Positions 3,949 through 64,000 of a stretch of 64,000 nucleotides of DNA are shown here, in pieces. The first letter of the stretch is position 1, and each line of letters begins with the position of its first letter. The notes beneath the pieces were generated by a model, which worked only from the letters and a program-made list of their open reading frames with translations, had not been told where the DNA came from and did not search any database. Location of the stretch: IMG/VR virus record IMGVR_UViG_3300028654_000001, positions 186,001 through 250,000 of that record; one strand, 5' to 3'. The position numbers were made by a program, and so were the translations under genes.

Positions 3949-3987
3949 TAGCCCTCCAACACTAAGAGTTCACATCAATCACTGAGT

Positions 3988-4560: not shown

Positions 4561-4599
4561 GGCTTGATTTGTAACCCAGGTTCGGTGTAAAGGCTAGCC

Positions 4600-5298
4600 A
4601 TGCCTCAACCCCACGAGTATATCGCCTTTGCTCTTGATGTCCCTGATGCCAGTACGGCGGAGCGTTTCATTACGATCCTCGAGCCTTATGTGGGTGCCTT
4701 TAAGGTAGGTCTGGAATTATTCATAAATACCGGACGAACCTTCATGGAGTTGACCACCAACCCAATCATCCTGGACCTCAAGCTGAATGATATCCCAGAA
4801 ACAGTGGAGCGGGCGGTCAAGACCGGCGGAGACCGTGGTGTCAAGTTCATGACGATCCACGCCCAGCAGAGGAAGGCCCTGGAGAAGGCGGTTAAGGCGG
4901 CCGAACCCTTTGGGATCACACTCTTGATGGTCACCGTTCTTACTTCGATGTCCGAAGAGGACTACAAGGAGTTGGACTTCAACCCAAAGAACAACATCCA
5001 GAGCCGTGTCGGGAGCCTCGGTGCATTTGGGTATGATTGTGGCATACGAGGATTCGTTTGCTCTCCCCATGAAGTTAGGTCTCTGAGTCAGGTGATGCCT
5101 GGAGCCTTTTACCTCGTACCTGGGGTTCGCCCAGTAGGATCCTCAGTAGGTGATCAAAAGCGTGTCGGGACGCCCTCTCAAGCTGTCCTTGACGGAGCTA
5201 AGCTGATCGTTATCGGTCGACCCATTCGAGATGCCCAAGATCCGAAAGCTGCTGCTCAAGCTATTGCCGAAGAGATTCGAATCGGAACTGCTCACTAG
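4600..5298 (+). CDS. pyrF: orotidine 5'-phosphate decarboxylase
   Basis: ALD, KVGLEL, DLKLNDIPETV, VTVLTS, VPGVRP, DQKR, VIGRPI motifs. Confidence 0.96.
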   Translation: MPQPHEYIAFALDVPDASTAERFITILEPYVGAFKVGLELFINTGRTFMELTTNPIILDLKLNDIPETVERAVKTGGDRGVKFMTIHAQQRKALEKAVKAAEPFGITLLMVTVLTSMSEEDYKELDFNPKNNIQSRVGSLGAFGYDCGIRGFVCSPHEVRSLSQVMPGAFYLVPGVRPVGSSVGDQKRVGTPSQAVLDGAKLIVIGRPIRDAQDPKAAAQAIAEEIRIGTAH

Positions 5299-26803: not shown

Positions 26804-28042
26804 ATGACTACAGCTCTTGCACGACCTAAGTTTTCGTGGAGGAAAGTTCTCGCTTTCGCGACTGATATCCTCCAAAAGCTTCCGAATCGAAGTGATGGGG
26901 TTCTGGCTATCATTGTCAAGTCTCTTTCCATTGTTGACTCATTCAACGTCCAAATGAACAAGGGTAAGTCAACTGCCCTGTTCGACTTCTTCGGCGATCT
27001 AGACTTGATTGAGGTAACCAATGCCCAGTTTGTCAGCTTGTTCTACTCAACAGGACTGAGGGACAGCTTCAAGATCATCAAATTCGAGATGGGGGATTAT
27101 GTAGAGATCGTGAGAGCCGAACACACTGGGATCGGTACTCTCTACTTCGTTGAGTGGCACTGGGGAAGTAAACCAGAACCTTCTGCTGACTTCTGGCATA
27201 CCAAGGGGTTCAACTTTGAGAAAGCTCTCGAGGTACTTTGGGACAAGTTCCACGGACGCCTCCATCTAGGGATCACCCAAGACCGAAGTGGGGAGCTCAA
27301 GTCAACCTATTCGGAGATTCCCGAGCCAAAAGATCCACTCTTAGGGAAGACCGCGGCCGTCCTTGACGAGTTCAAGGAGCAACACCTACTCTACATGAAG
27401 GATAAGATCCCGAGAACCTATCTGTTCTGCGGAAAGCAGGGGATCGGTAAGACATGCTTCTGTCTTCGACTCTCTCAACTCACCGGCGGTCGAACTCTGC
27501 GCATTGATGCCTGTGGGATCACCTCGGTTGGAGTCAAGGACCTAGACTTCATCATCAATGGTCTGTGCCCTAACTTCCTAATCGTGGATGACATCGACCG
27601 AGCTCCGGAATTGGAGAAGTCCCTCCCAACCCTGTTCTCAATCCTCTCAGACTTCAAGTGCAAGCACCCCAATGTCACCGTGGCCTTGACCATCAATGAC
27701 ATCACTAAACTTGACCCAGCCCTTCTGAGGCCAGGTCGTATTGATGAGATCATCGAGTTTGAACCACCCGATGAAGAAGAGCGTAGTCAAATTCTTGAGG
27801 GGTATCTGAAAGAGTTCGAGGTAGCCACTGAGGTAGACCTGAAGAGGATCGCTGAGTCTACTGAGGGGTTAACCGCCGCCTACCTTCGAGAAGTAGCCCT
27901 TCAACTCCGGTATCGCCCCCAAGAGAGAGTATTGAAGGTCATCAACCGGATGAACGATCTTGCCAGCGCCAAAGAGGAAAAGAAGAAAGAAACTAAGTGT
28001 AGCGAACCCGTTGGAAACTCGGCCCGCGCGACTCCGGTGTAA
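26804..28042 (+). CDS. AAA+ ATPase
   Basis: Walker A GKQGIGKT, Walker B IVDDID, SRH LDPALLRPGRID. Confidence 0.9.
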   Translation: MTTALARPKFSWRKVLAFATDILQKLPNRSDGVLAIIVKSLSIVDSFNVQMNKGKSTALFDFFGDLDLIEVTNAQFVSLFYSTGLRDSFKIIKFEMGDYVEIVRAEHTGIGTLYFVEWHWGSKPEPSADFWHTKGFNFEKALEVLWDKFHGRLHLGITQDRSGELKSTYSEIPEPKDPLLGKTAAVLDEFKEQHLLYMKDKIPRTYLFCGKQGIGKTCFCLRLSQLTGGRTLRIDACGITSVGVKDLDFIINGLCPNFLIVDDIDRAPELEKSLPTLFSILSDFKCKHPNVTVALTINDITKLDPALLRPGRIDEIIEFEPPDEEERSQILEGYLKEFEVATEVDLKRIAESTEGLTAAYLREVALQLRYRPQERVLKVINRMNDLASAKEEKKKETKCSEPVGNSARATPV

Positions 28043-34847: not shown

Positions 34848-35597
34848 ATGCCAGCTGGAGCCTTTTGGCGCCTTCAGTACAGAGATGGCCTAGATCACAG
34901 AATTCAAGCTCGGGCTGATAGGCAAAGGTTTGCCCAAGACAGGAACGTCCTCACAGCCATTACTCGCTACCACGAGGGCGCTTTCGTTCTGGAGGTTCAG
35001 CTTGTCGATGATGCGGAGTCTACCTTCGATGGGAGTCTTCACGAGCTCTACAATCGACAGCAGTCCATTCGAAACCCACCGCCAGTGACTAGGACCATCT
35101 CCTCCTTAGCTAGATGGGGAAACACACCTGATTCAAATGGGATGGTCATAGATCCCCAAGTCAGGGAGAACATCATCAGTCAGTACATCCAAAGCTCAGG
35201 GGGTCGTCAACGATTGGCCCAGGCGATGGTAGCCCCTCTCCGAACACGACTAGACTACTCGGGGATGGCAAGACGGGTATTCATGGTTGAACCTCTCCAA
35301 GGAGGGGCCTTGCCCACCTACGACAAGGACATGGTCAGTGACTTCAACCCGCCCGACTGGGTCGACGCTGGCACGTGGGTCAAGAGTGACGATAAATACG
35401 CGATTATTGTGGCCACCGAGCCGAAGAATACCGAAAGCCTACCCTTCAACTCGGCTATAGTTGAATACCAGGTCTGGAGGGATTACGGGCCTCCAAAGAG
35501 GCTTGACGCGGAAACCTTCTGTAAGTACTGGTTACCATCCGAGACTCCAGCAGAGCCTAGAACCCGATTCGAACGAATTCTGATGGACGATGATTGA
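34848..35597 (+). CDS. mosaic protein: capsid-like segment + PxW domain + TRFER tag
   Basis: IISQYI..GRQRLAQAMVAPLR.RLDY...RRVFMVEPL..GALPTYDKD; ends PRTRFERILMDDD. Confidence 0.75.
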   Translation: MPAGAFWRLQYRDGLDHRIQARADRQRFAQDRNVLTAITRYHEGAFVLEVQLVDDAESTFDGSLHELYNRQQSIRNPPPVTRTISSLARWGNTPDSNGMVIDPQVRENIISQYIQSSGGRQRLAQAMVAPLRTRLDYSGMARRVFMVEPLQGGALPTYDKDMVSDFNPPDWVDAGTWVKSDDKYAIIVATEPKNTESLPFNSAIVEYQVWRDYGPPKRLDAETFCKYWLPSETPAEPRTRFERILMDDD

Positions 35598-36680: not shown

Positions 36681-36718
36681 TAGTTACCACTACACCGGTG
36701 TAAGTGGTAACTAATGCC
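36676..36718. promoter_or_regulatory. palindromic divergent promoter region (two back-to-back GGTGTA motifs)
   Basis: ggcattagttaccactacacc|ggtgtaagtggtaactaatgcc; perfect inverted repeat except one extra A. Confidence 0.7.
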
Positions 36719-37754
36719 AACGTGGAGGATTGAGTACCCTAGCCTACTTGCAAACGATAGAACACAGCTATACGCCGAGTGGGCTCTCATCCGAAACGAT
36801 CCTATGCTGACAAACTGTGAGACTACAGAAAGTCAGGACAACCCAATAACGATACTTACAGCCTCTTTCCTTGGGTTTGGCCCTGAGAACCCCGCGGTCT
36901 CAGAGATTATCCGAAGGCGAGGGATCCTACAACTTCCTGTCAACATCCAGATGCCGCTTATAGTATCCCGTCTGGCATCCAACAGTGAAGGTAGGTATGA
37001 GGTCGTTAGGGATGACCAACCCAGGTTCGGTGATGGCAGGCATTCGAGACCAGACAGGTTGCGAGGACACACCATTAACGCGATCATGTTTGATGTTGAG
37101 GCTTCGTTCAATAGTGGGATCCCACTACATCCTGGGGATCTTGTCGGAGTGGATCCCGCTACTGGATTAGTTATCCGTGAGGGTTTGTCCTTACTCTCGA
37201 CTCCTCCCGTTGGGATTGTAGCTGGGGTTGATATCGCAGTTGGTAGTGATCGATCTGAGATTACCCTGGCTCGGAGAAGGTTCCCAGAAGATGCTGATAG
37301 AGCTTTCAGGCAAGAGTTCATGGGGGAATTCCCAGAAGAAGGCTCCCCGGTTAGAACTGAGCTGACAGTCCTCGCTGCGGATCCCCCAAGAGCCCCCATT
37401 GGGTTCACGGTGCATGAGCGGATTGGAATGGCAGTCATCAACCCACGTACAATCGAACGGATTCAGGCAACTAGGGTTAACGTACCCCTATTCGAACTTG
37501 AGAATAACCCACAAATCAACCTGAGTGACATACGAGAACGAAGACTTGACCTGATCGAGCGTTCGGTGCACTCGATCCAAGAACAAGAGGATCGGGAGAT
37601 CTTGGCCGCACTCGAGGGTACCTTCACGAACCAGCCGAGGCCTCCAGTGACCCCGACCCCAGTGGTGGCACCTGAACCTGTGGAGGAGAACTTCATCCGT
37701 AGAACCCGCTTCGAGCGTATCCTTGATGATACAGATGAACTGTACCCACTCTAA
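36714..37754 (+). CDS. mosaic protein with terminase-like and capsid-like fragments + TRFER tag
   Basis: LRGHTINAIMFD, GVDIAVGSDRS, FRQEFMGEF, RTELTVL, PLFELENNPQI..I.ERR.DLIER; ends RTRFERILDDTDELYPL. Confidence 0.75.
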   Translation: MPTWRIEYPSLLANDRTQLYAEWALIRNDPMLTNCETTESQDNPITILTASFLGFGPENPAVSEIIRRRGILQLPVNIQMPLIVSRLASNSEGRYEVVRDDQPRFGDGRHSRPDRLRGHTINAIMFDVEASFNSGIPLHPGDLVGVDPATGLVIREGLSLLSTPPVGIVAGVDIAVGSDRSEITLARRRFPEDADRAFRQEFMGEFPEEGSPVRTELTVLAADPPRAPIGFTVHERIGMAVINPRTIERIQATRVNVPLFELENNPQINLSDIRERRLDLIERSVHSIQEQEDREILAALEGTFTNQPRPPVTPTPVVAPEPVEENFIRRTRFERILDDTDELYPL

Positions 37755-38735: not shown

Positions 38736-39611
38736 ATGCCACTTCCAGATTGGGCTATCCTTGGATCCGTTATCTACCCACGGCCGCGTGATTCATATAT
38801 TAGAATCATAAGGGAATCTGGGGCTATCATAGTATATGCACTTCGAGAAGAGGTGCAGTTGAATCAGAACCATGTGGTATTCAGCGTAGACTCTGAAACT
38901 CTAGAGCATAACTGGATGCCACTTTCAGAAGCTGCACCCTTGTTTTCTGACTCAACTTATGGGCCAATGCCCTCCTGGTTTACAATTGGCTCGCGAATTA
39001 TTCAAAACCACAACAATCTGACTTACATAATCCTCTCTTTTGACCCTATCCGCTGGTCAATGACTGCAACATTAGAAGACGAAGTGAGTCCAACCAACTT
39101 CACGGTGACAAACTTCATTAGACATTGGAGACCCGCTAGCTCAATCACAGAGCAGAAACCCACTACGAATGTCACTAATATCGTTCAAGGTAGGGTTCAA
39201 GTTGCCCCAGATTGGTTGTATCCGGGGAAGTTCCTTAGAAGGAAAGTGAATCCAAATCACGTGTTTGTGGTCTCAAGCCTAGACCCAAGACGTTTCGTTG
39301 CAGTACTGACTAGACTGGATAGCCTAAGGCCGATGGTTCTTGGATCGATCTTTGAAGAAGCTGATTATTGCCGTATCGATGAACAGTTCACTCAAGTCGA
39401 CAGTACAGGGAGCCCAGCAGCTGAGTATACGTGCAAGAAGTGCGGTGAAACCGGCGAGAGAGACTACGACGCTGAGGAGAGACGAGCCAGCATCGACACT
39501 GTTAGGGCTTATACCTGCAAGAGGGGTCACACCTGGTACTTCGTGGCGGGTACCGATCAAGATGGTAAGCCAGCCAATCCAAGTAGATTTGAGCGTGATA
39601 TCGGCATTTAG
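38736..39611 (+). CDS. triple PxW-domain protein with Zn ribbon and SRFER tag
   Basis: LPDW/MPSW/APDW repeats, CKKC..CKRGH, ends PSRFERDIGI. Confidence 0.8.
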   Translation: MPLPDWAILGSVIYPRPRDSYIRIIRESGAIIVYALREEVQLNQNHVVFSVDSETLEHNWMPLSEAAPLFSDSTYGPMPSWFTIGSRIIQNHNNLTYIILSFDPIRWSMTATLEDEVSPTNFTVTNFIRHWRPASSITEQKPTTNVTNIVQGRVQVAPDWLYPGKFLRRKVNPNHVFVVSSLDPRRFVAVLTRLDSLRPMVLGSIFEEADYCRIDEQFTQVDSTGSPAAEYTCKKCGETGERDYDAEERRASIDTVRAYTCKRGHTWYFVAGTDQDGKPANPSRFERDIGI

Positions 39612-39653
39612 TAGTATTCTTTTTATAGTTTTGGTGTAGTGTTCACTGCCATT

Positions 39654-40838
39654 ATGCAAAAGAAGCCGATTGTGAAGTCCACACCGAACAAGAAACCTAG
39701 CTGGTGGAACGCCCTTAACCTAGAATCACTAGATAGGTACAGTGATATGGCCCGGATGGTCATAGATCACGCTGTAACATCCGGAAAAACGGTATTCTCT
39801 GGGAATTGTAAGGGCAACCTGGAAGATGCTGATCAGGAAGACGCTTTCGAAGCTTTCGTTCAGGCATTGGTAGACGGCATTCAGGGTTACGTCAGCTTCA
39901 CCCATGCTCCTCCATTCGGCCGTGGGGCACTTGAAACTTGGGTGCTATGGGAAGGTGGATCGATTACCATCAAAATGGGTCTTGACAAAAAGGTCATGGT
40001 CAGTGTTGTAGCCCTTGGTTCCGAGGATTATGCAAATATTGCAGGGATTCTTGGTGGGTACCTGATTCCAGATAATGTCCGTCAACCGGTATACTCCCTG
40101 GCTAACGGAAATAATGGGATCGAAATCATGGAAGTCGGTCTAGCAGGAGAGTATCTAGAACGAGAGAACTACGTGCAGGAAGTTCTCGACGGTTTCGAGT
40201 ACATCATTGAGGAGATCAGAAGAGAGAGTCCAATCGGTCGTCTATCCATTATCTATGGGGATCCTGGTAGCGGGAAAACATACTTGATTCGTGGAATTAT
40301 CAACGAAATTCCAGATGCTATCTTCGTCCTAGTACCCTGCCACCTCGTTGAAGACTTGGCTGGCCCTCAACTGGTACCTATGTTGATTAGGGCGAGAAGC
40401 TTAGCAGGTACCAATAACCCCATTGTCCTGATTATCGAAGACGCGGACAGGGCCCTAGTACCTAGAGAAGAAGGTTCCCTGGCGGCTATCTCCTCTTTGT
40501 TGAATGTATCGGATGGTATCCTTGGCCGTACCCTAAATCTCAGGGTAATCTGTACAACCAATGCAAAGTTGGAGGATATCGATCCAGCCTTAAAACGGGC
40601 AGGTCGTCTATCTGTACAACTCAACATCGGACTTCTACCACTTGAAAAGTGTCAGGAGATCTACAGTAGACTCATGGACGGAGCTGAAGCATTATTCAGC
40701 GAACCCTTACCACTAGCTGAGATCTACCGATTTGTGAGTACCGAAAAGTTCGCCGACTCCGACGAGGACACTGACGAGAGTGAGGACGATGATGACGAGG
40801 ACGATGATGACGAGGACGATGATGATGACGAGGAATAA
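39654..40838 (+). CDS. AAA+ ATPase with poly-Asp/Glu tail
   Basis: GDPGSGKT, IIEDAD, LLN.SDG, TTN, DPALKRAGR; GGTGTA upstream. Confidence 0.9.
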   Translation: MQKKPIVKSTPNKKPSWWNALNLESLDRYSDMARMVIDHAVTSGKTVFSGNCKGNLEDADQEDAFEAFVQALVDGIQGYVSFTHAPPFGRGALETWVLWEGGSITIKMGLDKKVMVSVVALGSEDYANIAGILGGYLIPDNVRQPVYSLANGNNGIEIMEVGLAGEYLERENYVQEVLDGFEYIIEEIRRESPIGRLSIIYGDPGSGKTYLIRGIINEIPDAIFVLVPCHLVEDLAGPQLVPMLIRARSLAGTNNPIVLIIEDADRALVPREEGSLAAISSLLNVSDGILGRTLNLRVICTTNAKLEDIDPALKRAGRLSVQLNIGLLPLEKCQEIYSRLMDGAEALFSEPLPLAEIYRFVSTEKFADSDEDTDESEDDDDEDDDDEDDDDDEE

Positions 40839-53138: not shown

Positions 53139-54278
53139 TTAGGAAGCGGTCTTGTACCGCTTCCCCTCTCGGATATCGGTTGAGCTGATATCAAAGTCAC
53201 ATTGAAGTCTATGACACCTGAGGTTTGGTGGACAGGGAAAGTCCATCAAGGTCTTCATAACCCCGTCCAATCGACGGTCAGCTATAGTCAGACCTGTACA
53301 AGTTTCTGTGAAGATCTTGGCCTGCTCCTCGATAGTGATCCCCCATCGTTTAGCATCAAAAAGAGTTTCTAAGCTATCGGCACCCAAGAGGATCTCTATT
53401 CCAGGGAGATGTTTTGCCTTGTCCACATAGTAAGGGGCGCCCCAAGTTATGTAGACATTCCTACCCTGCAGCATCTTGGCTCGCTTGAGGATGTCCCAAG
53501 GCTTGAGAGGATTCTTGTGCGGGGGCTCGGCTTCCAGGGTGAAGGCAACAGGGCCTCCTACCTGGTCAATGTACCCGTCAGCCAGACCAAAGTGCCCAAA
53601 GTGTGGTGGGTTGAAAGATCCCGGAAGCAAGGCCCCGCGCCTCCGATACTCATCCTTGGGAAACTCCAGGAGTCTCTTGCCTGTACTCGAGAAGTAAGGT
53701 CGGCGACGAAGTCGTTCTTCAGACAGGACTTCAGCCCTACCATTGCGGAACTCTTCGATGCACCCCTCAGGTAGGTCTAGGCCAGTGATGAAAGTATTGG
53801 TGGCATCCTTGATGGAACTGATCAGGAGAGCGTTACAGATCTGACCGTCCAGGTGCCTTCTTTCGGCTCCAACTCCCTTAACCAGCTTGACATAGGTCAA
53901 GGTAGCTTTGTACTCTTGGAAGGTTGCCACGAAGATTCGGTGGTCTCCCTTATGGGCTGTAGTGCTCGCTGTGACCGCACAGACTCCGATCCCAATAGCT
54001 GGGGCCCCTTCATATTGGTACGCTCTGTAGAAGGCATCCATAGCGAAGTCCATGGCCGTCCCTTCGTTGGCATAACCGTCTGGAGAGAACCCAAGAAAGT
54101 TGTCAATGTCCTCCTTGGCATACGGCATATGACAACCAACTAGTACATCTGAGACCCCCGGTACATCCCAAATGTGACCAAAAGTCCCGGCACCCGCCAT
54201 ACCGGCAATGCAGAGCCGTACTTTCTTGGTTGGAAGGAAGTCTACTGAATCAAGTGATTGTAGTTGGGGTAGTGGCAT
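53139..54278 (-). CDS. CinA-like N-domain fused to a nucleotidyl (NMN adenylyl)transferase
   Basis: PGSFNPPHFGH (HxGH), LGAD, DISSTDIR; N-terminal GAG..VPG.S..PY. Confidence 0.75.
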   Translation of the reverse strand: MPLPQLQSLDSVDFLPTKKVRLCIAGMAGAGTFGHIWDVPGVSDVLVGCHMPYAKEDIDNFLGFSPDGYANEGTAMDFAMDAFYRAYQYEGAPAIGIGVCAVTASTTAHKGDHRIFVATFQEYKATLTYVKLVKGVGAERRHLDGQICNALLISSIKDATNTFITGLDLPEGCIEEFRNGRAEVLSEERLRRRPYFSSTGKRLLEFPKDEYRRRGALLPGSFNPPHFGHFGLADGYIDQVGGPVAFTLEAEPPHKNPLKPWDILKRAKMLQGRNVYITWGAPYYVDKAKHLPGIEILLGADSLETLFDAKRWGITIEEQAKIFTETCTGLTIADRRLDGVMKTLMDFPCPPNLRCHRLQCDFDISSTDIREGKRYKTAS

Positions 54279-54282
54279 ACTT

Positions 54283-55326
54283 TCAGCTTCCTGCTGCTAC
54301 GAGTTTAGGTTCAGCATTCTTCCTCAAAAGACTGCAAAAAGAACCTGGTACCTCAAATGGCCTGAAGGTAGGCTTCCCGACGAGGCTCTTGAGCAGGTTG
54401 TCAAAAGCCTCGTGAACATCATCTGCCTTGGAGGGCCTCATTCTTCTCTCTGGGTTCAGACAGATCTTGAGTAGGTTTTGGATCTCTCGGGGTACCGCAT
54501 CAGGCATCTCGTTGGTTTTAACGTCTCCGCCGAGAATAGCAACCATACACTTGACGGCCATATAGATGTCGGTCGCTTCCGAAGCTTCCTTTTTTTCTGG
54601 TACCTCAGGCGGGTAGTAGTCAGCATACCTAGTGATGAGTACGCGAATTCTGGTCATACCAGAGTAGATTGAATCAGCGGGATCAGGCTCGCCAACGGGT
54701 CTACTCCCATGAGGAGTGTCCTCTAGTGCCCGCTCTCTAGTAGAGGCCGAGTAGCACCAATCGATGAGCTTGGCGCCGTGGTTCTGACCAAACAACAGGA
54801 TGTGAGGGGGGAGAACTGCCCCATGCAGGAAACCATTCTTGTGCGCCCACCATAGGCCAACCAGGGTTCTCTTGAACATCCAAGCCATGTCCCGATAGTC
54901 AATCCCTTTTGGGTAGGCTCTAAGAACATCATCAATGGTGAAGTAGTCGGGTATCAATGAAAGGATGTTCCCCCTCTGTCCCCGAGAGTCAAACCCTCCG
55001 TAGCTAGTTGGATAGTAGAGGTTGAACTTGGACCAATCCGGATCCGTTGATGTTAGTCCATTCAGGACTTGGCTCTCCCTGATCAATAAATCGTTGTTAC
55101 TTGGATCCGAGCAGATCCTAACGATGACCGGAACCTCAACCACATCATCATCGTCATCCTCTAGAATGTGATCAAAGCGAGTCCGAGGCCCTGCGTGCTT
55201 GACAGGAGTTTTTGGAGCTGGGTTCTCATCCTTGTAAGTCCCCTGGTAAAGGTTGCAGAGATCACCCTCCATCAACCGAGCCCCAAACGTCACGCTCTTC
55301 TTGTCACCAAGAGCTAGCGTCGGCAT
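54283..55326 (-). CDS. atypical Ser/Thr kinase-like protein with an inserted TRFDH tag
   Basis: N.DL..RE, AWMFKR.L..L..AH..G.LHGAVLPPHIL, LIDWCYS, YPPE, DIYM. Confidence 0.8.
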   Translation of the reverse strand: MPTLALGDKKSVTFGARLMEGDLCNLYQGTYKDENPAPKTPVKHAGPRTRFDHILEDDDDDVVEVPVIVRICSDPSNNDLLIRESQVLNGLTSTDPDWSKFNLYYPTSYGGFDSRGQRGNILSLIPDYFTIDDVLRAYPKGIDYRDMAWMFKRTLVGLWWAHKNGFLHGAVLPPHILLFGQNHGAKLIDWCYSASTRERALEDTPHGSRPVGEPDPADSIYSGMTRIRVLITRYADYYPPEVPEKKEASEATDIYMAVKCMVAILGGDVKTNEMPDAVPREIQNLLKICLNPERRMRPSKADDVHEAFDNLLKSLVGKPTFRPFEVPGSFCSLLRKNAEPKLVAAGS

Positions 55327-56693
55327 GTTAGTTCTTTGTCATCAGCGGTTGACCCATACGAGAAAATAGTGACAGGAGCTCTCATAGTTTTAGTTATTCC
55401 AGATATTAGACGATCTGTATTCTTAAGGGTAGTGAAAACTGGCTCAGCATAGATATCTAAGAAGTGAGAGTAGGGGATCCCATCCTTATCGAAGTACTTT
55501 TTGAGGTATTGGTAGGCTTCCCAAGTATTTGCGTCGAGGAGTATCTTGTAGAAAGGCTTGGTCGAACAGTCGTACCGTAAGCAGACTTTTTGTGGGCCGT
55601 GGATGTGGTCGAGGTGATTGAGGGCTATCTCATCCAACCCACCAAGAACTTCGCGGGCGTATCTGGCCATAACGAAGTCGTAGTAACCTACCCGGAAGGC
55701 ACCTTGCCACTCTCCTTGAGTGTTATGCTCTACTAATCTGGCATCTGGGTCCTCCGATGGGAAGGGTCCAGTCCCGTGCCGCGTAAGATAGGTTCGAGTA
55801 ACCCACATCCTGGTCACCTTTCCAGAGAACCCCTTGAGTAGTTCTAGGGCGTTGTGGAAAGTGCAGTTGCTCCAAGTAGAGTGAGGGTGGAACCCGTACT
55901 CCTCGTCCAGAAGTACTCCTTGAGCCCCCTCGAATAGGGTGACCCCTGATTCGAGAGCCTTGGTTAGGTAGTCTTGGTTGACTACCCTGACCCCTGCCTT
56001 GTCGATTAGGTGGTAGTAGTTCTCCATGAAGTACTCGACCAAAGTTCTGTCCCTGAGCATGTCATATTCGAACATGAGCCTTCGAGTCATATCCACGGAT
56101 AACTCAACGGGTAGGTCGTCCAAAAGGGGGGTCGTCTCCTCCAACTTTCTCTGACGAATAACTTCAAGTTTGTCCTTGATGACTGATGGCTTTCGGAAGT
56201 CCCTCATCCGAATAGCACCCTCCGGATCTTGTATTGAGTCTGAGACAGTTTCCCCAATACCCATGCCACATGACCCGTGGCGCCCAAACCCAACACTCTT
56301 ACAGGTAAAGAGAGCCTCTCGGTGCAGCTCTCGAAGGCGGTTAGTCGCCATGTGGAAAGGAGTGGTGACTAGGGCCATCTCATCAATGGCCAACCTTTGG
56401 TAGGCGTCGGTCACCCCAAGAGTTTCAAGGTGCTCCTCTTCGTATTGGAGAAGAAGCGGGTTCACCACCATGTAACGGCTAAGGTAAGTCTCCGCGCCGG
56501 CAAGAGTACCCGAACTAAACTGGGAAAAACAATGAGTTTTACCGTCTCTTAGGACTACATGATGGGCAGCTTGAGCACCACCATTAAAACGAACTACAGT
56601 GTGAGACCCCTCCCTACGAGTAAGGTAGTCTACTACACTACCCTTCCCTTCGTCCCCAAACCCCAATCCAACAACGATCCATACCTTAGCCAT
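55314..56693 (-). CDS. purA: adenylosuccinate synthetase-like protein
   Basis: GLGFGDEGKG, RFNGGAQAAH, HGSCGMGIG, FEGAQG.LLD, TRHGTGPFP, FRVG. Confidence 0.85.
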   Translation of the reverse strand: MAKVWIVVGLGFGDEGKGSVVDYLTRREGSHTVVRFNGGAQAAHHVVLRDGKTHCFSQFSSGTLAGAETYLSRYMVVNPLLLQYEEEHLETLGVTDAYQRLAIDEMALVTTPFHMATNRLRELHREALFTCKSVGFGRHGSCGMGIGETVSDSIQDPEGAIRMRDFRKPSVIKDKLEVIRQRKLEETTPLLDDLPVELSVDMTRRLMFEYDMLRDRTLVEYFMENYYHLIDKAGVRVVNQDYLTKALESGVTLFEGAQGVLLDEEYGFHPHSTWSNCTFHNALELLKGFSGKVTRMWVTRTYLTRHGTGPFPSEDPDARLVEHNTQGEWQGAFRVGYYDFVMARYAREVLGGLDEIALNHLDHIHGPQKVCLRYDCSTKPFYKILLDANTWEAYQYLKKYFDKDGIPYSHFLDIYAEPVFTTLKNTDRLISGITKTMRAPVTIFSYGSTADDKELTCRR

Positions 56694-56726
56694 GGAATTT
56701 CACCGAAGTGCTTCAAATAAATGAGC

Positions 56727-56761
56727 AGTAGTTCGATATAAAGAGAAATACCGAACTACTG
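56727..56761. terminator. intergenic hairpin between the vWA and purA-like genes
   Basis: cagtagttcg...cgaactactg inverted repeat. Confidence 0.5.
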
Positions 56762-56775
56762 TTATGTTATGCAAA

Positions 56776-57744
56776 TTACAGTCTTTGGATCTTCGGGGGT
56801 TTTCCTGGGTCCACTCCCTTGGCCTTGGCCAAGTCCACCAATGAGGATGCTATCTTGTTCGAGACCAATTGAGAGGTTCCGGTAGCCTCGAGAGCTGCCT
56901 TGGCCCCATCAACGGTTACGACCTTCTCACAGACACCCATCGTGGTTGCAATGAGCTCACAGATGTCCTCCTCATCTTGAAGGAGCAGGACATTCTCTGG
57001 CCCAAGTAACTTCTTCCAAGCATCCTGGATCTTGGTATCACGACCATGGTTGGTGTGCTGGGGTATGATGTAGAAGACGTTGTACCGTTGCTGACACTCC
57101 TTGATGATGTCAGCAGTTGGTATCTCAGCTACTTCCATTGTCTCTCCGAAGAGAGTTTTGACCGACTCACGTCTTACCGCCGGATGCGCGTACTCATCAC
57201 CAATGATGAATAAGTAGCCCTTTTTCTGTCGTTTCTCCCAACAGTCGATCTTGGTATGTCGAGCGAAGAAGTAGATGGCATTCTGGTAGGACTCACCGTT
57301 GTTACCCCCACCGTTACCCTCGAGCCAGAAGGACTCGAGGTCTTCATCCATCCGGTTGTCACTCTCGAATTGACCAAACTGAGCTGAGCCTCGGTCTGAG
57401 AACTCATCCCCGACAGCCCCAAACAAGATCTGAGTATCTGGAATACCAACTTTGCCAATTAGGCCGTGTAGCTTAGGGAGTTTCCCGTGAGCTACACGAG
57501 GTACCGACTCCATTGACCCAGTGACATCCAGGATAATCCCAACTGCAATTGAGTTTGGGTGCTCCAATGAGTCACAAGACTCGCGTATTGCCACCCCAAG
57601 TGGATTCAGACGTGGGTGAACATTCTGCTGGTCCCGTGGTTTTGACGCCTGTGCAGCGTGGTGTGCAAAGGTTGGCTGACCAGTCTGTTGACGAGTCGTG
57701 CTCCTTTGTTGATAGAAATCATGACTCCAACTTCCGCCTCCCAT
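56776..57744 (-). CDS. vWA-domain protein
   Basis: MIDAS ILDVTGSM, AVGD, QFESD, EGNGGG..ESY, LFIIGDE. Confidence 0.85.
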   Translation of the reverse strand: MGGGSWSHDFYQQRSTTRQQTGQPTFAHHAAQASKPRDQQNVHPRLNPLGVAIRESCDSLEHPNSIAVGIILDVTGSMESVPRVAHGKLPKLHGLIGKVGIPDTQILFGAVGDEFSDRGSAQFGQFESDNRMDEDLESFWLEGNGGGNNGESYQNAIYFFARHTKIDCWEKRQKKGYLFIIGDEYAHPAVRRESVKTLFGETMEVAEIPTADIIKECQQRYNVFYIIPQHTNHGRDTKIQDAWKKLLGPENVLLLQDEEDICELIATTMGVCEKVVTVDGAKAALEATGTSQLVSNKIASSLVDLAKAKGVDPGKPPKIQRL

Positions 57745-57800
57745 GAGAGACCTCTACTTTCCTTCATGTTTACTGTTAGAACAACTCGTTGTGGTCTGAT

Positions 57801-58046
57801 CTAATCTTCATCGTCTCTAAGAATCCGATCGAACCGAGTACTCCCAAGAAGCGTTGTACTCGGTTTACTAGACACCGATGGCACTTCATCGGTGTCTAGA
57901 ATTCGATCGAATCGAGTTGGTCGAGAAGTACTTTGGGTATCTGGTACTTGACTCCGAATAGGCTCTACACCCGCTTGACTTTTAGGCTCTTGTTTTCTAC
58001 GAGACATAAGAGTGTAGAAGTCATCTGTCCAAAAACCGCCGCCCAT
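57801..58046 (-). CDS. mini-protein: copy of the vWA N-terminus + two TRFDR tags
   Basis: MGGGFWTDDFY vs MGGGSWSHDFY; PTRFDRIL and STRFDRIL. Confidence 0.8.
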   Translation of the reverse strand: MGGGFWTDDFYTLMSRRKQEPKSQAGVEPIRSQVPDTQSTSRPTRFDRILDTDEVPSVSSKPSTTLLGSTRFDRILRDDED

Positions 58047-58053
58047 AAGCCTC

Positions 58054-59442
58054 TTAGACCCGTGAAAGATTCTTCTCTGAATTCTTTCGAACTTCTGAGA
58101 ACTTCATGTCACGTATGAGCTTGCCGTTTTCGAAGACAACCTGAAGCACGTCTGACTTGGTTGACCCAGCTGGAACCGACTTGAACTCCCCACCTTCCAT
58201 AATGAGGCTCAGTCGCCCCGACTTTGAAACCTTGCCTGGATCAGTAACAGGATCTTTGAACACGGGCACGGTTGCCCCTGTATCAGTTGTGATCTCCGAG
58301 CACTTCAGAGCCCACTTCTGGGTATCGCGATCCAACTGCTGAAGTAAGCCGCCGCCCATACCGAAGGCAATGTTCGAGGTTGAGTACTTGTGAGCCGTTA
58401 TTGTGGCAAGGATCTCACGAAGTGAGTCAATGTTGATGCCGTCACCTTGAATGAGCTTGAAGTAGGGGGGAAGAACCTTGAACCCACGCATGTTCCTGGT
58501 CATCCCAAGCTTGTTCTCAAGTGTCTGTAGGCACCGAAGAACCATTGCGGGTGGATCCCCTGAATCAGGTCGGATCACCAAGCAACCACCAGAATTCTTT
58601 ACCTGATCAAGGAGCTCTCCGCACCACATGTTCTCGATAACATTGAAGATATCGTAACTATCCGACACACAGGCAACGACCTTGTCCTTTTTCAGGAACT
58701 GAGTGATCATGTTGCGGTAGGCGAGGAGCTCTCGTTCACGGCCCCACGAAGTAATGCTCGAATGCTCAGCCGCTGGGATTGAGAATCCGGCCATGGGCTC
58801 ACCATAGAAAGCCCTAGCAAACATGATCCCTTCGAGGGTATCGGTACCCCTGAAGTTCACGAGATGGCTCATACCTCCGATGCCAGCCGATTCATGTGAG
58901 CTGACCCCTCGGGCTCCGAAGTCGTGCAGCTTGAAGTAGATCTCGGCCCAAGGATCGTTGGCTGTCTCCAATAGGTGCTCGAGAATGACTCGCTTGCAGT
59001 AGTAGGACTGGGTGGCCACCGTACTCGGGTACCATGTGCGAACAATCTGAGCTTCTAACCAACTGGCTGCCCAGAAGGTATCAGCGCCGCCGGTGCTCTC
59101 CAATGATAGGACAATGTTCCGGGTTGGAACCTCCAGACCCTCAGGCACCGCCTTGATCCTCACAGGCCAGTACCCACCGTTGGCCACTATTTTCCCAAAA
59201 CCTTCTGCATTGAATGGCTCCCCATGAGCCTCCAGAACCTCCTTGGCTTCGACAACATCCGCGTCCGTGATGGGTGTCGTAAGGTATTCCTTGATCAGGT
59301 ACTGCAGTCCAAAGAAAATTGTAGATCCGAACTTACCACCCCGTGACTCCATGTAATCGTACATCCCAGTGGTGCTCGGTGGGTAAGTCAGCCAATGGGC
59401 TGACTTATAACTGTCTGTATTTAATATTGGATTGAATCTCAT
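58054..59442 (-). CDS. nadV: nicotinamide phosphoribosyltransferase (NAMPT)
   Basis: TDSYK, FFGLQY, WYP.TVAT, LHDFGARG, PAAEHS, VSDSYD, IRPDSGDP, QGDG, FGMGG.LLQ, KDP.TD.GK.SK.GR. Confidence 0.95.
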   Translation of the reverse strand: MRFNPILNTDSYKSAHWLTYPPSTTGMYDYMESRGGKFGSTIFFGLQYLIKEYLTTPITDADVVEAKEVLEAHGEPFNAEGFGKIVANGGYWPVRIKAVPEGLEVPTRNIVLSLESTGGADTFWAASWLEAQIVRTWYPSTVATQSYYCKRVILEHLLETANDPWAEIYFKLHDFGARGVSSHESAGIGGMSHLVNFRGTDTLEGIMFARAFYGEPMAGFSIPAAEHSSITSWGRERELLAYRNMITQFLKKDKVVACVSDSYDIFNVIENMWCGELLDQVKNSGGCLVIRPDSGDPPAMVLRCLQTLENKLGMTRNMRGFKVLPPYFKLIQGDGINIDSLREILATITAHKYSTSNIAFGMGGGLLQQLDRDTQKWALKCSEITTDTGATVPVFKDPVTDPGKVSKSGRLSLIMEGGEFKSVPAGSTKSDVLQVVFENGKLIRDMKFSEVRKNSEKNLSRV

Positions 59443-59451
59443 CTTGTCCTC

Positions 59452-60183
59452 TCATAACTCGAAGTTAAAACCGCTTTGAACTGCTTTATCGTACTTCTTC
59501 TGGTCAAATCTGTAAAGTTGGGCAGGCCTGCCTAGTTTAGGATGGATTGCACCACCGACCCCAACTAGGATGCCCATGAGGATAATTCGGCGTCTGAAGT
59601 TACCCTTATCAAGCTTCTTCTGAAGGATCGCTTCGTATAACTGTTGCAACTGCCCGAGAGTGAACGTCGTCGGTAGCAGGTTGAAACCTATTGGAGCGTA
59701 TCTGATCTTCCCTTGAAGTCGGTTAAGGGCTAACTCTAGGATCTTCTTGTGATCAAAAGCCAACTTCATTCGACTCAGCTTATTAACTGAAGTCCAGACA
59801 GCCAGGTCTGCATCGTCCCCGCCGACGATATCTTCGTAGTCGGTTTTTCTAACCAAGGCGAAGTAAGCAACTGAGATGACTCTCCCGCGTGGATCACGAA
59901 ATGGATCTCCAAAGGTATAGAGTTGTTCCAGATACTCGAAACGGGCTCCGGTCTCCTCTTCTACCTCGCGTACAACAGCTGCTTCTAAGCTCTCATTACC
60001 CCCAATGTTGACGTAACCCCCTGGAAGTGCCCAGTGATGTTTGAAAGGGTCCCTAGCCCGTCGAATTAGAAGAACCTTGAGTGGGTTGTCCTCGTCACTT
60101 GGATCAAAGCCGAATACAATTCCATCTACGGTAAGGGCTGACATCGGCCAATCGTAAACGAACCTCTTCTTTTCTTTGGTCAC
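59452..60183 (-). CDS. nrtR: NrtR-type Nudix-wHTH transcriptional regulator
   Basis: WALPGG..RE..EETG Nudix box, LEQLYTF..RDPRGR, LAFDH, FTL..LQ..YE.IL..NFRR..GRPA.LY. Confidence 0.9.
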   Translation of the reverse strand: MTKEKKRFVYDWPMSALTVDGIVFGFDPSDEDNPLKVLLIRRARDPFKHHWALPGGYVNIGGNESLEAAVVREVEEETGARFEYLEQLYTFGDPFRDPRGRVISVAYFALVRKTDYEDIVGGDDADLAVWTSVNKLSRMKLAFDHKKILELALNRLQGKIRYAPIGFNLLPTTFTLGQLQQLYEAILQKKLDKGNFRRRIILMGILVGVGGAIHPKLGRPAQLYRFDQKKYDKAVQSGFNFEL

Positions 60184-62245: not shown

Positions 62246-63493
62246 CTACACCGAGTAAGGGACGAGGCCTTCGTCTGAGTTCAATATAGACCAAAGGATC
62301 ATTCCTAGTGTAGACCAATCTACACTAGTCTTATCTATAGACGAGGAATCATTGACCAAGTCCCTAAGCTTGATTACCTCAACGTAGGTTTTCTCTGTGT
62401 CAACCTCTATACCGAAAGTCTCTCCGGATTGAGCTATTCCCATAAGGTGGTCTCGCTCAGCCTTAGTGATCCTCCCGTAGAACAACGTGCTTGTGTGAGC
62501 TGATAGAGTACCTGCCAGCTGCAAGGTACCCAGCTCCTTGAGTCGAGCTGGGTCTATGGTGAAAGAGGTTTCCTCGTGGAGCTCTTCGAGGGCCACTTTC
62601 TTGGTCTCCCCTTTATCTTCCTTGGCGCTCCCACCTGGTAGCTCAATAATATACCCTGTATTAGTCCTAGCCGGGCTTCTAAACTCTTTTACCAAGAGAA
62701 CCTCAGTATCCCACAGATGCTTGAGACCCTCTTCCTCAGGACGGTAGAGAAGCGCTACAGATGAGACGTCTGAACGTCCGAACACGAACTCATTTTTCTT
62801 GGCCCTTTGTTCGGCTGCAATCCAAACATTGACATGAAGGCACCAGCAAAAGACTTTGTCCATCTGCTGTCCCACCCGGAATGTCCAAAGGACTCGAGCA
62901 CTGTCCAGGCGGTTGCCAGCGGCCGTCTGGGACTTATACCACCTCTGGAAGGTGGTGTCCTTCCAGACGAGCAAGGGTACCTGAGCTTCGCCGCCGACTC
63001 GTAGGGAACCCTCTCCCAGGCTCTTGACGGCATCCTCGAGGGTGGTGTCCAGTGTCGAGTAGTTGGCCACCTTCAACTTGGTAGCCATGTGCTGAATGTA
63101 TTGAACCTTCTGAGCATCAGGTGGGGTACCAAGAATCACCTTCCCTGTGTCTGCCCAGACTCCGAATTCGACATTGGTTGTAAGACCTGGGAGAGTATTC
63201 AGATCTCGAGGAATCCAGAAAACAATCACATCAGCCATATTCAGTGCGGAGGTTTCCCACTCAACCTGGTCGACGTAATCTCCGAACACTTTTCCATCAC
63301 GAGGTTCCGGAACAAATACGTGACCATCGAACCCAAGCTTCTCAAGTAGTTCGAGGGCTTCGGGTCTCCAACTCTTGGTTTCCTTATCCCTAGGTGTAGG
63401 CCCCGCCAAAAACAGACTCTTCACAACCTCTGTGGGAAGATCCTCTTTAGCATAGACCACCTTCATGCCCGACTTCCATGTCTCTGGATTCAT
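62246..63493 (-). CDS. nucleoside deoxyribosyltransferase-like domain fused to a Nudix hydrolase
   Basis: LFLAGPTPR..SWR..WE..ADVIVFW..TTNVEFG; EFRSP..ELPGGS..ALEELHEET. Confidence 0.8.
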   Translation of the reverse strand: MNPETWKSGMKVVYAKEDLPTEVVKSLFLAGPTPRDKETKSWRPEALELLEKLGFDGHVFVPEPRDGKVFGDYVDQVEWETSALNMADVIVFWIPRDLNTLPGLTTNVEFGVWADTGKVILGTPPDAQKVQYIQHMATKLKVANYSTLDTTLEDAVKSLGEGSLRVGGEAQVPLLVWKDTTFQRWYKSQTAAGNRLDSARVLWTFRVGQQMDKVFCWCLHVNVWIAAEQRAKKNEFVFGRSDVSSVALLYRPEEEGLKHLWDTEVLLVKEFRSPARTNTGYIIELPGGSAKEDKGETKKVALEELHEETSFTIDPARLKELGTLQLAGTLSAHTSTLFYGRITKAERDHLMGIAQSGETFGIEVDTEKTYVEVIKLRDLVNDSSSIDKTSVDWSTLGMILWSILNSDEGLVPYSV

Positions 63494-63557
63494 GGTCCAG
63501 AATTACACCGGAAGTTGGGTACCTAGTTTACTAAACCCCTTATCGGAGTGTTCAAGC

Positions 63558-64000
63558 ATGGCATCGGACCTCCACCTAATCCAACGGGTAGCATCAAAGT
63601 GGTCGAGTAAGGATTTTGAGTCAAGGTATGCCCGCCTTCTGCTTTCGATGTCAAGGGATCAAGCCAAAAAGGTCCTTGGTTTCCCTCCAAATGCTAACCC
63701 ATCAGAAAGTGAAATTACCAAGAACTATAGGGAGTTGGCTCTTAGGAACCACCCTGATCGTGGTGGTGATCTTGACACAATGGTGGAGATCAATGTTGCC
63801 AAGGATGTGCTGACCGGAAAGGCTCAGGAACGTTGGCAACCAGAGCCGAGCCCAGAGCGTACTAAATACAAGCCACCCCCACGTCCAGAGGCAGCCTACA
63901 CAGTGAAAGGGGTTCCATTTGCCGCCGCTTGGTCTGGAGCAGGGGTCCCAAGTGGCACTGATTGGAAGTTCGTCAGTGAGCAAGTTAGCTTGTACAGTAA
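63558..64000 (+). CDS. J-domain protein (3'-truncated by the window edge; absent from the ORF track)
   Basis: MASDLHLIQRVASKW..AKKVLGF..EITKNYRELALRNHPDRGGD..M.EIN.A.D.L; frame open to the end. Confidence 0.85.
   Translation, partial: MASDLHLIQRVASKWSSKDFESRYARLLLSMSRDQAKKVLGFPPNANPSESEITKNYRELALRNHPDRGGDLDTMVEINVAKDVLTGKAQERWQPEPSPERTKYKPPPRPEAAYTVKGVPFAAAWSGAGVPSGTDWKFVSEQVSLYS

What the first reader, a model, noticed from the sequence alone, without database searches (positions are those of the whole stretch)
57801..58046. Mini-gene equals the N-terminal peptide of the adjacent vWA protein plus two tags
The 81-aa ORF starts MGGGFWTDDFY..SRRKQ, closely matching the start of the vWA gene just downstream (MGGGSWSHDFY..STTRQQ). 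The rest is only linker and two TRFDRIL tags with acidic tails. This is the simplest, internally verifiable case of 'borrowed peptide + tag' and supports an adaptor/decoy design: it could link whatever binds the vWA N-terminus to the tag receptor.
Basis: partly seen in the sequence, partly recalled or inferred. Interest (0 to 1): 0.75.

Follow-up and report, generated by a model that had tools for sequence, protein, structure and literature searches.

The report
Tagged mini-protein copying neighbour's N-terminal arm
A huge soil phage encodes a conserved 81-residue protein made of a copy of its neighbour's first ~20 residues plus two copies of a short peptide tag that about 45 other phage proteins carry. 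It most likely acts as a tether or competitor within an uncharacterised enzyme module.

Summary
ORF 57801-58046 (-) encodes 81 aa. Its first 11-19 residues match the start of the adjacent vWA-fold protein far better than any other ORF start in the 512-kb phage genome (score 51; next best 20 of 1,432). It carries two TRFDRIL motifs.

The gene is real. At least 12 orthologues lie between NAMPT and the vWA-like gene, with a conserved RBS and maintained frame. pN/pS is 0.40 (N-block), 0.80 (linker) and 0.16 (tag block).

The copied peptide is the signature N-terminal arm (M-G-[GS]-[GST]-x-[WYF]...Y..R, Gly2 invariant) of a large phage vWA-like family. That family is always paired with a PurA-like enzyme whose aspartate loop is replaced.

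A complex prediction gave weak support (0.39; best control 0.00). It put the mini-protein's N-block on the PurA-like enzyme, partly on loops aligned to PurA's catalytic and IMP-binding loops.

The tag is a clade-specific peptide motif: 47 copies, mostly C-terminal. Its receptor is unknown.

Best reading: a bivalent tether or competitor. The binding partner and tag receptor remain inferred.

The parts
57801..58046 (-). Mini-gene CDS, 81 aa plus stop.
   Evidence: ORF list. There are 11 database orthologues at 54-66% identity, plus L009, L010 and L011. Position is syntenic in L019, L020, L022/23 and L055-57.
57981..58046 (-). N-block, residues 1-22. It copies the Gly-rich tip and first helix of the vWA-like arm.
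   Evidence: Score 51 against a next best of 20. Conserved pattern is MGGGxWxDTFYxRRExARRE. pN/pS 0.40 with pS 0.62. Residues 3-7, 9-10, 14-15 and 17-18 form the confident predicted interface with the PurA-like enzyme.
57921..57980 (-). Variable linker, residues 23-42.
   Evidence: Orthologues carry in-frame indels (81-94 aa). pN/pS is 0.80.
57897..57920 (-). Tag 1, PTRFDRIL (residues 43-50).
   Evidence: Motif scans. Invariant in two-tag orthologues.
57819..57842 (-). Tag 2, STRFDRIL (residues 69-76), followed by the tail RDDED and the stop.
57815..57916 (-). Conserved RNA structure inside the CDS. P1 pairs tag-1 codons with tag-2 codons. P2 is a 15-bp hairpin. P3 is a 12-bp hairpin.
   Evidence: MFE -51.8 kcal/mol, z -5.37, 0 of 200 shuffles as good. 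In 8 orthologues 96% of cells are paired, against 26-40% in the slid controls. Two pairs show compensatory changes. Covariation exceeded all 500 shuffles. It is unique in the genome and has no Rfam match.
58050..58055 (-). Shine-Dalgarno-like AAGAGG, overlapping the NAMPT stop codon, 3 nt before the ATG.
   Evidence: Sequence. GGAGG, GGGGG or GAAGG sits at the same place in orthologues.
56776..57744 (-). vWA-fold protein (phrog_2971 family) whose N-terminal arm is copied.
   Evidence: AF2 model pLDDT 95.7. Foldseek matches integrin beta I-like/vWA domains at E 1e-6. No Pfam hit. The family has 1,716 representative clusters, and 132 of the 150 best start with MG.
55314..56693 (-). PurA-like enzyme. 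The P-loop and catalytic His are kept; the L-aspartate loop is replaced.
   Evidence: PF00709 at E 8e-58. Alignment to solved PurA. Loop comparison. It is the predicted docking partner of the N-block.
54283..55326 (-). Pseudokinase with a TRFDHIL+DDDDD tag inserted before the beta3-like strand.
   Evidence: Weak Pkinase hit below the cut-off. The HRD Asp is replaced (HGAV/I) in all members. The tag is conserved in orthologues.
58054..59442 (-). NAMPT, the upstream gene. Its stop lies 7 nt before the mini-gene start.
   Evidence: Pfam NAPRTase and NAMPT_N. Same arrangement in relatives.

Best explanation
The mini-gene encodes a real, mostly disordered micro-protein with three parts.
1. An N-block that copies the Gly-rich tip and first helix of the neighbouring vWA-fold protein's N-terminal arm.
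2. A fast-evolving spacer.
3. Two copies of the clade-specific TRF[DE]RIL peptide motif.

Most likely it works as a bivalent tether. The N-block docks on the PurA-like enzyme, which is the invariable genomic partner of the vWA-like family. The predicted site partly covers the loops aligned to PurA's catalytic-His loop and its IMP-binding loop, and is presumably the site the vWA-like arm itself uses. The two tags would then connect that enzyme to whatever factor recognises the same tag on about 45 other phage proteins, including the module's own pseudokinase.

In the two-tag lineage, the tag-coding block has in addition become a stable RNA structure. It probably tunes mRNA fate or the translation of the downstream vWA-like gene.

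Shown: gene conservation and selection, arm mimicry, tag distribution and the RNA structure.
Inferred: binding to the PurA-like enzyme (weak in-silico support only), a common tag receptor, and the role of the RNA structure.
For: - Reality of the gene. At least 12 orthologues sit in conserved synteny with a conserved RBS, and the reading frame is kept across indel-rich linkers. pN/pS is 0.40 / 0.80 / 0.16 by block.
- Arm mimicry. The N-terminal match is unique in the genome. The same signature, M-G-[GS]-[GST]-x-[WYF]-[SD]...Y..R with Gly2 invariant, is present in 132 of the 150 best family representatives. It also occurs in mycobacteriophage Bxz1, Vibrio and Rhizobium phages.
- Partner. The vWA-like and PurA-like genes lie close together in every locus read.
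- Complex prediction. Chains were the PurA-like enzyme, the arm-less vWA-like protein and the mini-protein. ipSAE was 0.39, 0.37 and 0.46; the best control was 0.00; verdict 'weak support'. The mark was reached by 58 of 80 solved complexes and 2 of 110 mismatched pairs. At a score of 0.60 or under it was reached by only 7 of those 80 and by both mismatches. The confident interface is mini residues 3-18 against PurA-like residues 39-42, 54-56, 79-84, 111-114, 141-143 and 207-220.
- Tag as a peptide motif. The genome holds 39 strict and 8 variant copies, against 1 in shuffles. Forty of the 47 lie within 9 residues of a stop. Arg codons are mixed AGR/CGN and third positions are free. The tag is conserved at orthologous sites. 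It is confined to this clade.
Against: - The complex score falls in the band where passes are more often wrong than right. Agreement between runs was only 30-33%. The predicted contact residues are not significantly more conserved than average (p 0.14).
- In the vWA-like monomer model the arm is ordered (pLDDT 93-98). The native arm may therefore be a structural element rather than a partner-binding peptide.
- No tag receptor was found.
- The low pS (0.29) of the tag block is explained in part by the RNA structure. Two tags therefore need not mean bivalent binding.
- L058 carries the tag in its pseudokinase, but there is no mini-gene directly upstream of its vWA-like gene in the 8.3 kb read.
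- There is no expression data.
Confidence: 0.42

Rival explanations
1. Dominant-negative decoy (micro-protein). The N-block competes with the vWA-like arm for its docking site and switches the module off or delays it. The tags serve turnover or timing rather than recruitment.
For: The architecture is the same as in the tether reading. The N-block keeps all family-conserved arm residues (G2-G4, W6, Y11, R14, R18). The predicted site on the PurA-like enzyme is likely the arm's own site. The gene is translationally coupled upstream of the vWA-like gene.
Against: Nothing shows that the arm and the N-block compete. The tags are shared with many unrelated proteins and with the pseudokinase of the same module, which suggests recruitment to a common factor. 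No protease or degron link was found.
Confidence: 0.2
2. Second substrate. The PurA-like enzyme joins a nucleotide to the free N-terminal glycine amine (after Met removal) of the vWA-like protein and of the mini-protein. The mini-protein would be a diffusible, tagged carrier of that modification.
For: Gly2 is invariant across the family. The canonical L-aspartate loop TTGR.RR is replaced by G.WQ..FR.G.FD in all 14 locus-derived vWA-linked PurA-likes, and TTGR.RR is absent from the 120 best homologues, while the P-loop, His43 and Gln257 are kept. The N-terminal tip (residues 3-7) is predicted to lie against the H43 and C141 loops. PurA chemistry, in which an amine attacks 6-phospho-IMP, is established knowledge.
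Against: There is no chemical evidence at all. The docking is weak. The arm tip is ordered on the vWA domain in the monomer model.
Confidence: 0.12
3. Mainly a cis-regulatory element. The ORF is a leader or upstream ORF, and its translation opens the 41-bp RNA structure to control expression or stability of the vWA-like/PurA-like message. The peptide itself would be secondary.
For: The structure is very stable and conserved, lies 55 nt upstream of the vWA-like start, and shows compensatory pairs. The block has 92% nucleotide identity although pS elsewhere is 0.62.
Against: The gene, with its N-block and a tag, exists in L010 without the structure (z 0.08) and in L011 with only a weak one (z -2.0). 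The N-block is conserved at peptide level while its synonymous sites are free. The tags match a genome-wide peptide motif.
Confidence: 0.1
4. Non-functional remnant of a 5' duplication of the vWA-like gene.
For: The first 33 coding bases are 26/33 identical to the neighbour's. Homing endonucleases are polymorphic in this operon.
Against: The gene is retained in at least 12 genomes whose vWA-like proteins have diverged to 56% identity. The frame, RBS and N-block are conserved, pN/pS is below 1, and there is no upstream DNA similarity.
Confidence: 0.03

Closest known systems
MicroProteins (e.g. plant LITTLE ZIPPER, animal Id proteins)
   Same: A small protein that consists essentially of the interaction segment of a larger related protein. 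It can engage that protein's partners. Here it is encoded right next to its parent gene.
   Different: Known cases are eukaryotic transcription-factor regulators that act by titration. Here the copied part is a roughly 20-residue N-terminal arm of a phage vWA-fold protein, and it is fused to two copies of a separate recruitment motif. Titration was not tested.
Tethering adaptors such as SspB (substrate-binding part, flexible linker, C-terminal ClpX-binding peptide)
   Same: The layout is the same: a binding element, a disordered linker, and a short terminal peptide that docks on a hub.
   Different: There is no sequence or fold relation. The binding element is a peptide, not a domain. The hub is unknown and no link to a protease was shown.
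Shared terminal targeting peptides (encapsulin cargo-loading peptides, T4 capsid-targeting sequence, ssrA-like degrons, T4 clamp-binding C-termini)
   Same: One short motif, mostly at the extreme C-terminus, is shared by dozens of otherwise unrelated proteins of one genome.
   Different: The sequence [RY]PTRF[ED]RIL plus a short, often acidic tail matches none of these consensus motifs as I recall them. The tag also works from internal loops. Its destination is unknown. No paper in the library holds the motif.
Adenylosuccinate synthetase PurA and phage PurZ
   Same: The partner enzyme has the PurA fold signature (PF00709), the GDEGKG P-loop, the catalytic His and the FEGAQG motif.
   Different: The L-aspartate loop is replaced. 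The Thr of the IMP loop is an invariant Cys. The enzyme keeps Asp13, whereas PurZ has Ser (bioRxiv 10.1101/2025.10.22.683976). It is always linked to a vWA-fold gene.
Leader-peptide or upstream-ORF attenuators
   Same: A short ORF directly upstream of a regulated gene overlaps a stable RNA structure.
   Different: No alternative pairing, terminator U-tract or RBS sequestration was seen. The peptide is itself conserved.

Membership tests
vWA (von Willebrand A / integrin I-like) domain, for the neighbour protein | Alpha/beta Rossmann-like vWA fold. | tested here: met
   AF2 model pLDDT 95.7. Foldseek matches integrin beta I-like, SpaC and NorD vWA domains at E about 1e-6 with TMq about 0.45.
vWA domain | MIDAS motif D-x-S/T-x-S after strand beta1. 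| tested here: met
   D72-V-T74-G-S76. D72 is invariant and T74/G75/S76 are nearly invariant in 85 sequences.
vWA domain | Match to the Pfam VWA models. | tested here: not met
   No Pfam family at E 0.01 or better. No PDB sequence match. Only phrog_2971, of unknown function, matched.
Adenylosuccinate synthetase (PurA) | PF00709 match, GDEGKG P-loop, catalytic His41 equivalent and Gln224 equivalent. | tested here: met
   E 8e-58. D13, K16, H43 and Q257 are invariant in 80 sequences.
Adenylosuccinate synthetase (PurA) | L-aspartate loop T-T-G-R-x-R-R. Residue roles are from my recollection of E. coli PurA studies. | tested here: not met
   The loop is replaced by G.WQ..FR.G.FD. None of the 120 best homologues has TTGR.RR.
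PurZ (2-aminoadenine pathway) | Ser in place of PurA Asp13. | tested here: not met
   GDEGKG is kept. The criterion comes from bioRxiv 10.1101/2025.10.22.683976.
Active protein kinase, for the 'kinase-like' gene | Catalytic Asp of the HRD motif, and a Pfam score above the cut-off. | tested here: not met
   H-G-A-V/I replaces H-R-D in all 8 aligned members. Pkinase scored 22.4 bits against a cut-off of 31.7.
MicroProtein | A small protein homologous only to an interaction segment of a larger protein. | tested here: met
   81 aa. Residues 1-20 match the vWA-like arm and there is no other domain.
MicroProtein | Acts by titrating the parent protein's partner. | not testable with these tools
   There is only a weak in-silico docking on the PurA-like enzyme.
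Short linear motif / targeting tag | Recurrence on unrelated proteins, selection at peptide level and an exposed position. | tested here: met
   47 copies against 1 in shuffles. Codons are free at synonymous sites. Forty of 47 lie within 9 residues of the C-terminus.
Short linear motif / targeting tag | An identified receptor. | tested here: inconclusive
   The candidates are the neighbouring 466-aa J-protein and the Cdc48-like AAA proteins. They were examined only by sequence and context. None is established.

The most novel reading that the evidence does not exclude
The PurA-like enzyme has swapped aspartate for a protein amine. It would attach a purine nucleotide to the N-terminal glycine of the vWA-fold protein, which would be a new protein modification. 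The mini-protein would be a tagged, diffusible second substrate that carries this mark to the hub recognised by the TRFERIL tag. If so, a module present in more than 1,700 phage protein clusters would be a protein-nucleotidylating system with a lineage-specific delivery adaptor.
Probability: 0.1. Interest if true: 0.9.

Novelty: new variant of a known kind. Interest (0 to 1): 0.62.

Why it matters
- It is a clean natural example in a phage of a micro-protein assembled from two short peptide modules, and its parts can be tested one by one.
- It points to two larger unknowns. One is a genome-wide, clade-specific C-terminal tag system on about 45 proteins of half-megabase soil phages. The other is a widespread phage module of a vWA-fold protein with an invariant N-terminal glycine, a PurA-like enzyme with a rebuilt amine-binding loop, and a pseudokinase. 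This module sits among NAD-salvage genes.
- The mini-protein is a ready-made handle for both. Its N-block is a candidate ligand for the enzyme, and its tags are bait for the receptor.
- It also shows one stretch of sequence under two constraints at once: a peptide motif and an RNA structure.

Tried and rejected
- Tag as a DNA repeat: rejected. Synonymous positions and Arg codon families vary freely.
- Tag as a relic of J-domain helix III. A MAFFT alignment suggested this. Profile-profile comparison of the N-termini shows no homology, probability 0.1%. The tag sits in an insertion just before the beta3-like strand (by eye from the aligned sequences).
- In-trans docking of the N-block on the arm-less vWA domain: no support. 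The control with the PurA-like chain replaced scored 0.00. This is not evidence against binding.
- PurZ identity: rejected, because Asp13 is kept.
- Cdc48-like AAA protein (39639-40838) as a dedicated tag receptor. A 380-kb relative has the AAA protein at 51% identity but no tag enrichment. This weakens the idea without excluding it.
- The J-protein C-domain as receptor: untested. The Atlas gave no hit.
- Literature searches for the motif and for the vWA/PurA/kinase module found nothing relevant.
- RNA evidence: no RNA run was listed. Read laying was not used because only DNA runs hold the locus.
- Rfam: no match.
- The contact residues on the PurA-like enzyme are not significantly more conserved than average.

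Full report
**Context.** The window is bases 186001-250000 of a 512,571-bp virus record with direct terminal repeats. Its DNA is held by rhizosphere metagenomes. The finding lies in a minus-strand operon. In order of transcription it reads:
- NrtR-like Nudix (59452-60183)
- NAMPT (58054-59442)
- the mini-ORF (57801-58046)
- a 322-aa protein with no Pfam match (56776-57744)
- a PurA-like protein (55314-56693)
- a kinase-like protein (54283-55326)
- an NMNAT-like protein (53139-54278)

**Observation.** The 81-aa ORF is there. Its first 11 residues score 51 (BLOSUM62) against the start of the next gene. The best of the other N-termini among 1,432 ATG-ORFs in the genome scores 20, and the pattern occurs nowhere else in six frames. 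Two TRFDRIL motifs follow, at residues 44-50 and 70-76. At DNA level only the first 33 coding bases are alike (26/33), and the upstream sequence is not. This is therefore not a recent duplication.

**Is it a gene?** Eleven database proteins of 83-94 aa are 54-66% identical over the full length. More distant versions occur in L010 (67 aa, one tag) and L011 (63 aa, with a tag-like end).
- In every locus read the gene lies directly upstream of the vWA-like gene. In all but L011, whose contig lacks NAMPT, it also lies directly after NAMPT.
- A Shine-Dalgarno-like sequence follows the NAMPT stop in the closer orthologues and L010; none is evident in L011.
- The alignment shows a conserved N-block (MGGGxWxDTFYxRRExARRE), a linker full of in-frame indels, and a nearly invariant C-block.
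- Summed over pairs of five orthologues, pN/pS is 0.40, 0.80 and 0.16 for the three blocks. pS is 0.62, 0.62 and 0.29.
Translation itself could not be checked, because no RNA run was listed.

**What the copied peptide is.** The neighbour protein models with pLDDT 95.7 and pTM 0.93. Its closest solved folds are integrin beta I-like and other vWA domains, and it has a D-x-T-x-S MIDAS motif.
- The family is large: 1,716 representative clusters.
- Of the 150 best representatives, 132 begin M-G-[GSY]-[GST]-x-[WYF]-[SD]-x-x-x-Y-x-x-R, and Gly2 is invariant. Most of the rest are truncated or have a miscalled start.
- The same start is seen in mycobacteriophage Bxz1 gp248 (12 codons inside its annotated start) and in Vibrio and Rhizobium phages.
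- In the model, residues 1-50 are ordered (pLDDT 93-98), with a helix at 7-20.
- The mini-protein therefore copies a signature N-terminal arm, not a loose peptide. It keeps every family-conserved arm residue: G2-G4, W6, Y11, R14 and R18.

**The module.** In every locus read, the vWA-like gene has a PurA-like gene close by, adjacent or within 2-3 kb. In the actinophage-type loci and Bxz1 a kinase-like gene precedes it. In the window's relatives the kinase-like gene follows the PurA-like gene.
- PurA-like enzyme. It keeps the P-loop, His43 and Gln257. The loop that aligns with the canonical T-T-G-R-x-R-R aspartate loop reads G.WQ..FR.G.FD in all 14 vWA-linked members, and none of the 120 best homologues has the canonical form. 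The Thr of the IMP loop is an invariant Cys. It keeps Asp13, so it is not PurZ.
- Kinase-like protein. It has H-G-A-V/I in place of H-R-D in all members and is therefore a pseudokinase. The actinophage and Bxz1 versions carry an HPD-containing, J-domain-like N-terminus; the three metagenomic actinophage-type versions scanned give PF00226 hits at E 3.6e-6 to 1e-3.
- None of these tag-less phages has the mini-gene.

**Who binds the N-block?** One complex job was run with the PurA-like enzyme, the vWA-like protein without residues 1-21, and the mini-protein as partner.
- The verdict was weak support: ipSAE 0.39, 0.37 and 0.46, best control 0.00.
- The mark was reached by 58 of 80 solved complexes and 2 of 110 mismatched pairs. 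At 0.60 or under it was reached by only 7 of the 80 and by both mismatches.
- The confident interface joins mini residues 3-7, 9-10, 14-15 and 17-18 to PurA-like residues 39-40, 42, 54, 56, 79-80, 83-84, 111, 114, 141-143 and 207-220. This takes in the loops around His43 and Cys141.
- With the PurA-like chain replaced, the score was 0.00.
- Agreement between runs was low (30-33%), and the contact residues are not significantly more conserved than average (p 0.14).
- I treat this as a lead that fits the gene linkage, not as proof.

**The tag.** A six-frame scan finds 39 strict TRF[DE]x[ILVM]L sites in 38 ORFs. A PSSM adds 8 variants, against 1 hit in shuffled sequence.
- Forty of the 47 lie within 9 residues of a stop.
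- Codon usage shows selection on the peptide.
- The tag is conserved at orthologous positions, including the pseudokinase loop.
- It is abundant in related huge-phage fragments: 11 in 228 kb and 10 in 145 kb, with controls at 0. It is absent from an actinophage-type record and not enriched in a 380-kb relative. IMG/VR as a whole gave only 14 matching stretches.
- Carriers are mostly small Cys-rich proteins. They also include a Tad2-like protein and two proteins with partial major-head-protein likeness.
- No paper in the library holds the motif.
- The receptor is unknown. The neighbouring 466-aa J-protein and the Cdc48-like AAA proteins are candidates only.

**An overlooked layer.** The sense strand of 57815-57916 folds into a 41-bp Y-shaped structure.
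- The codons of tag 1 pair with those of tag 2. Both use the self-complementary UUCGAUCG, which explains Asp in place of the usual Glu. Two hairpins lie between them.
- MFE is -51.8 kcal/mol, z -5.37, with 0 of 200 shuffles as good.
- In eight orthologues the block is 92% identical. Of all cells, 96% pair, against 26-40% in the slid controls. Two pairs show compensatory changes, and covariation exceeded all 500 shuffles.
- The element is unique in the genome and has no Rfam match.
- It is absent from one-tag L010 (z 0.08), weak in L011 (z -2.0) and absent from the 5' half of the gene (z -0.12).
- The gene therefore predates the structure. Part of the C-block's conservation is at nucleotide level.

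**Verdict.** The adaptor/decoy idea is the best available reading and gains weak support for the PurA-like enzyme as the N-block's partner. Binding, the tag receptor and expression remain untested. Overall this is a new variant of a known kind: a micro-protein or tether built from short motifs.

Noticed in passing
window 57815-57916 (-): A conserved, very stable RNA structure (41 bp, z -5.4, compensatory pairs) lies inside the mini-gene. It is formed partly by pairing of the two tag-coding repeats. It has no Rfam match and is unique in the genome.
   Followed up: yes
window 55314-56693 (-) and homologues P0164-P0283: The PurA-like subfamily linked to vWA-like genes has its aspartate-binding loop replaced and an invariant Cys in the IMP loop. 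It keeps Asp13, so it is neither canonical PurA nor PurZ.
   Followed up: partly
window 54283-55326 (-); L012, L013, L015, L024: The kinase-like protein lacks the catalytic Asp in all members, so it is a pseudokinase. The actinophage and Bxz1 versions have a weak J-domain at the N-terminus. The window clade has a tag-bearing loop insertion instead.
   Followed up: partly
genome 10-134 kb (loci L027-L032); window 19348, 24482, 35565, 37707, 41509, 60987: About 45 proteins carry the [RY]PTRF[ED]RIL tag, mostly at the extreme C-terminus. Many are small Cys-rich paralogues clustered on the minus strand. One (genome 10105-10578) has a Tad2-like (Thoeris anti-defence) domain.
   Followed up: partly
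window 34848-35594 (+) and 36714-37751 (+): Two tagged proteins each match a different part of phrog_2522 ('major head protein'). Neither is long enough to be a complete capsid protein.
   Followed up: no
window 38736-40838 (+): A 291-aa Zn-ribbon protein ends in a degenerate tag (PSRFERDIGI). The next gene is a Cdc48-like single-ring AAA protein with a poly-acidic tail of about 27 residues. A second similar AAA gene lies at 26804-28042.
   Followed up: partly
window 63465-64000 (+), continuing to genome 250865 (L049:166-1566): A 466-aa J-domain protein with an uncharacterised C-terminal domain of about 330 aa lies next to the operon. The genome has no Hsp70 gene.
   Followed up: partly
window 56726-56761 (-) and 57768-57779 (-): A 14-bp-stem hairpin lies between the vWA-like stop and the PurA-like start. 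A small inverted repeat (ACAAC-GA-GTTGT), conserved in L009, L019 and L020, lies between the mini-gene and the vWA-like gene.
   Followed up: no
L020 8289-8918, L022 8326-8973, L023 2246-2893: Endonuclease VII-type genes are inserted between the vWA-like and PurA-like genes in some relatives but not in the window. In L022 the vWA-like gene appears split (57 + 245 aa).
   Followed up: no
L024 (Bxz1) 3965-5020: The annotated start of Bxz1 gp248 lies 12 codons upstream of the family's conserved MGSGAW start and is probably miscalled.
   Followed up: no
L058 (407-kb contig): This relative carries the tag in its pseudokinase loop, but its vWA-like gene directly follows the NrtR gene. There is no NAMPT or mini-gene in the 8.3 kb read.
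   Followed up: partly
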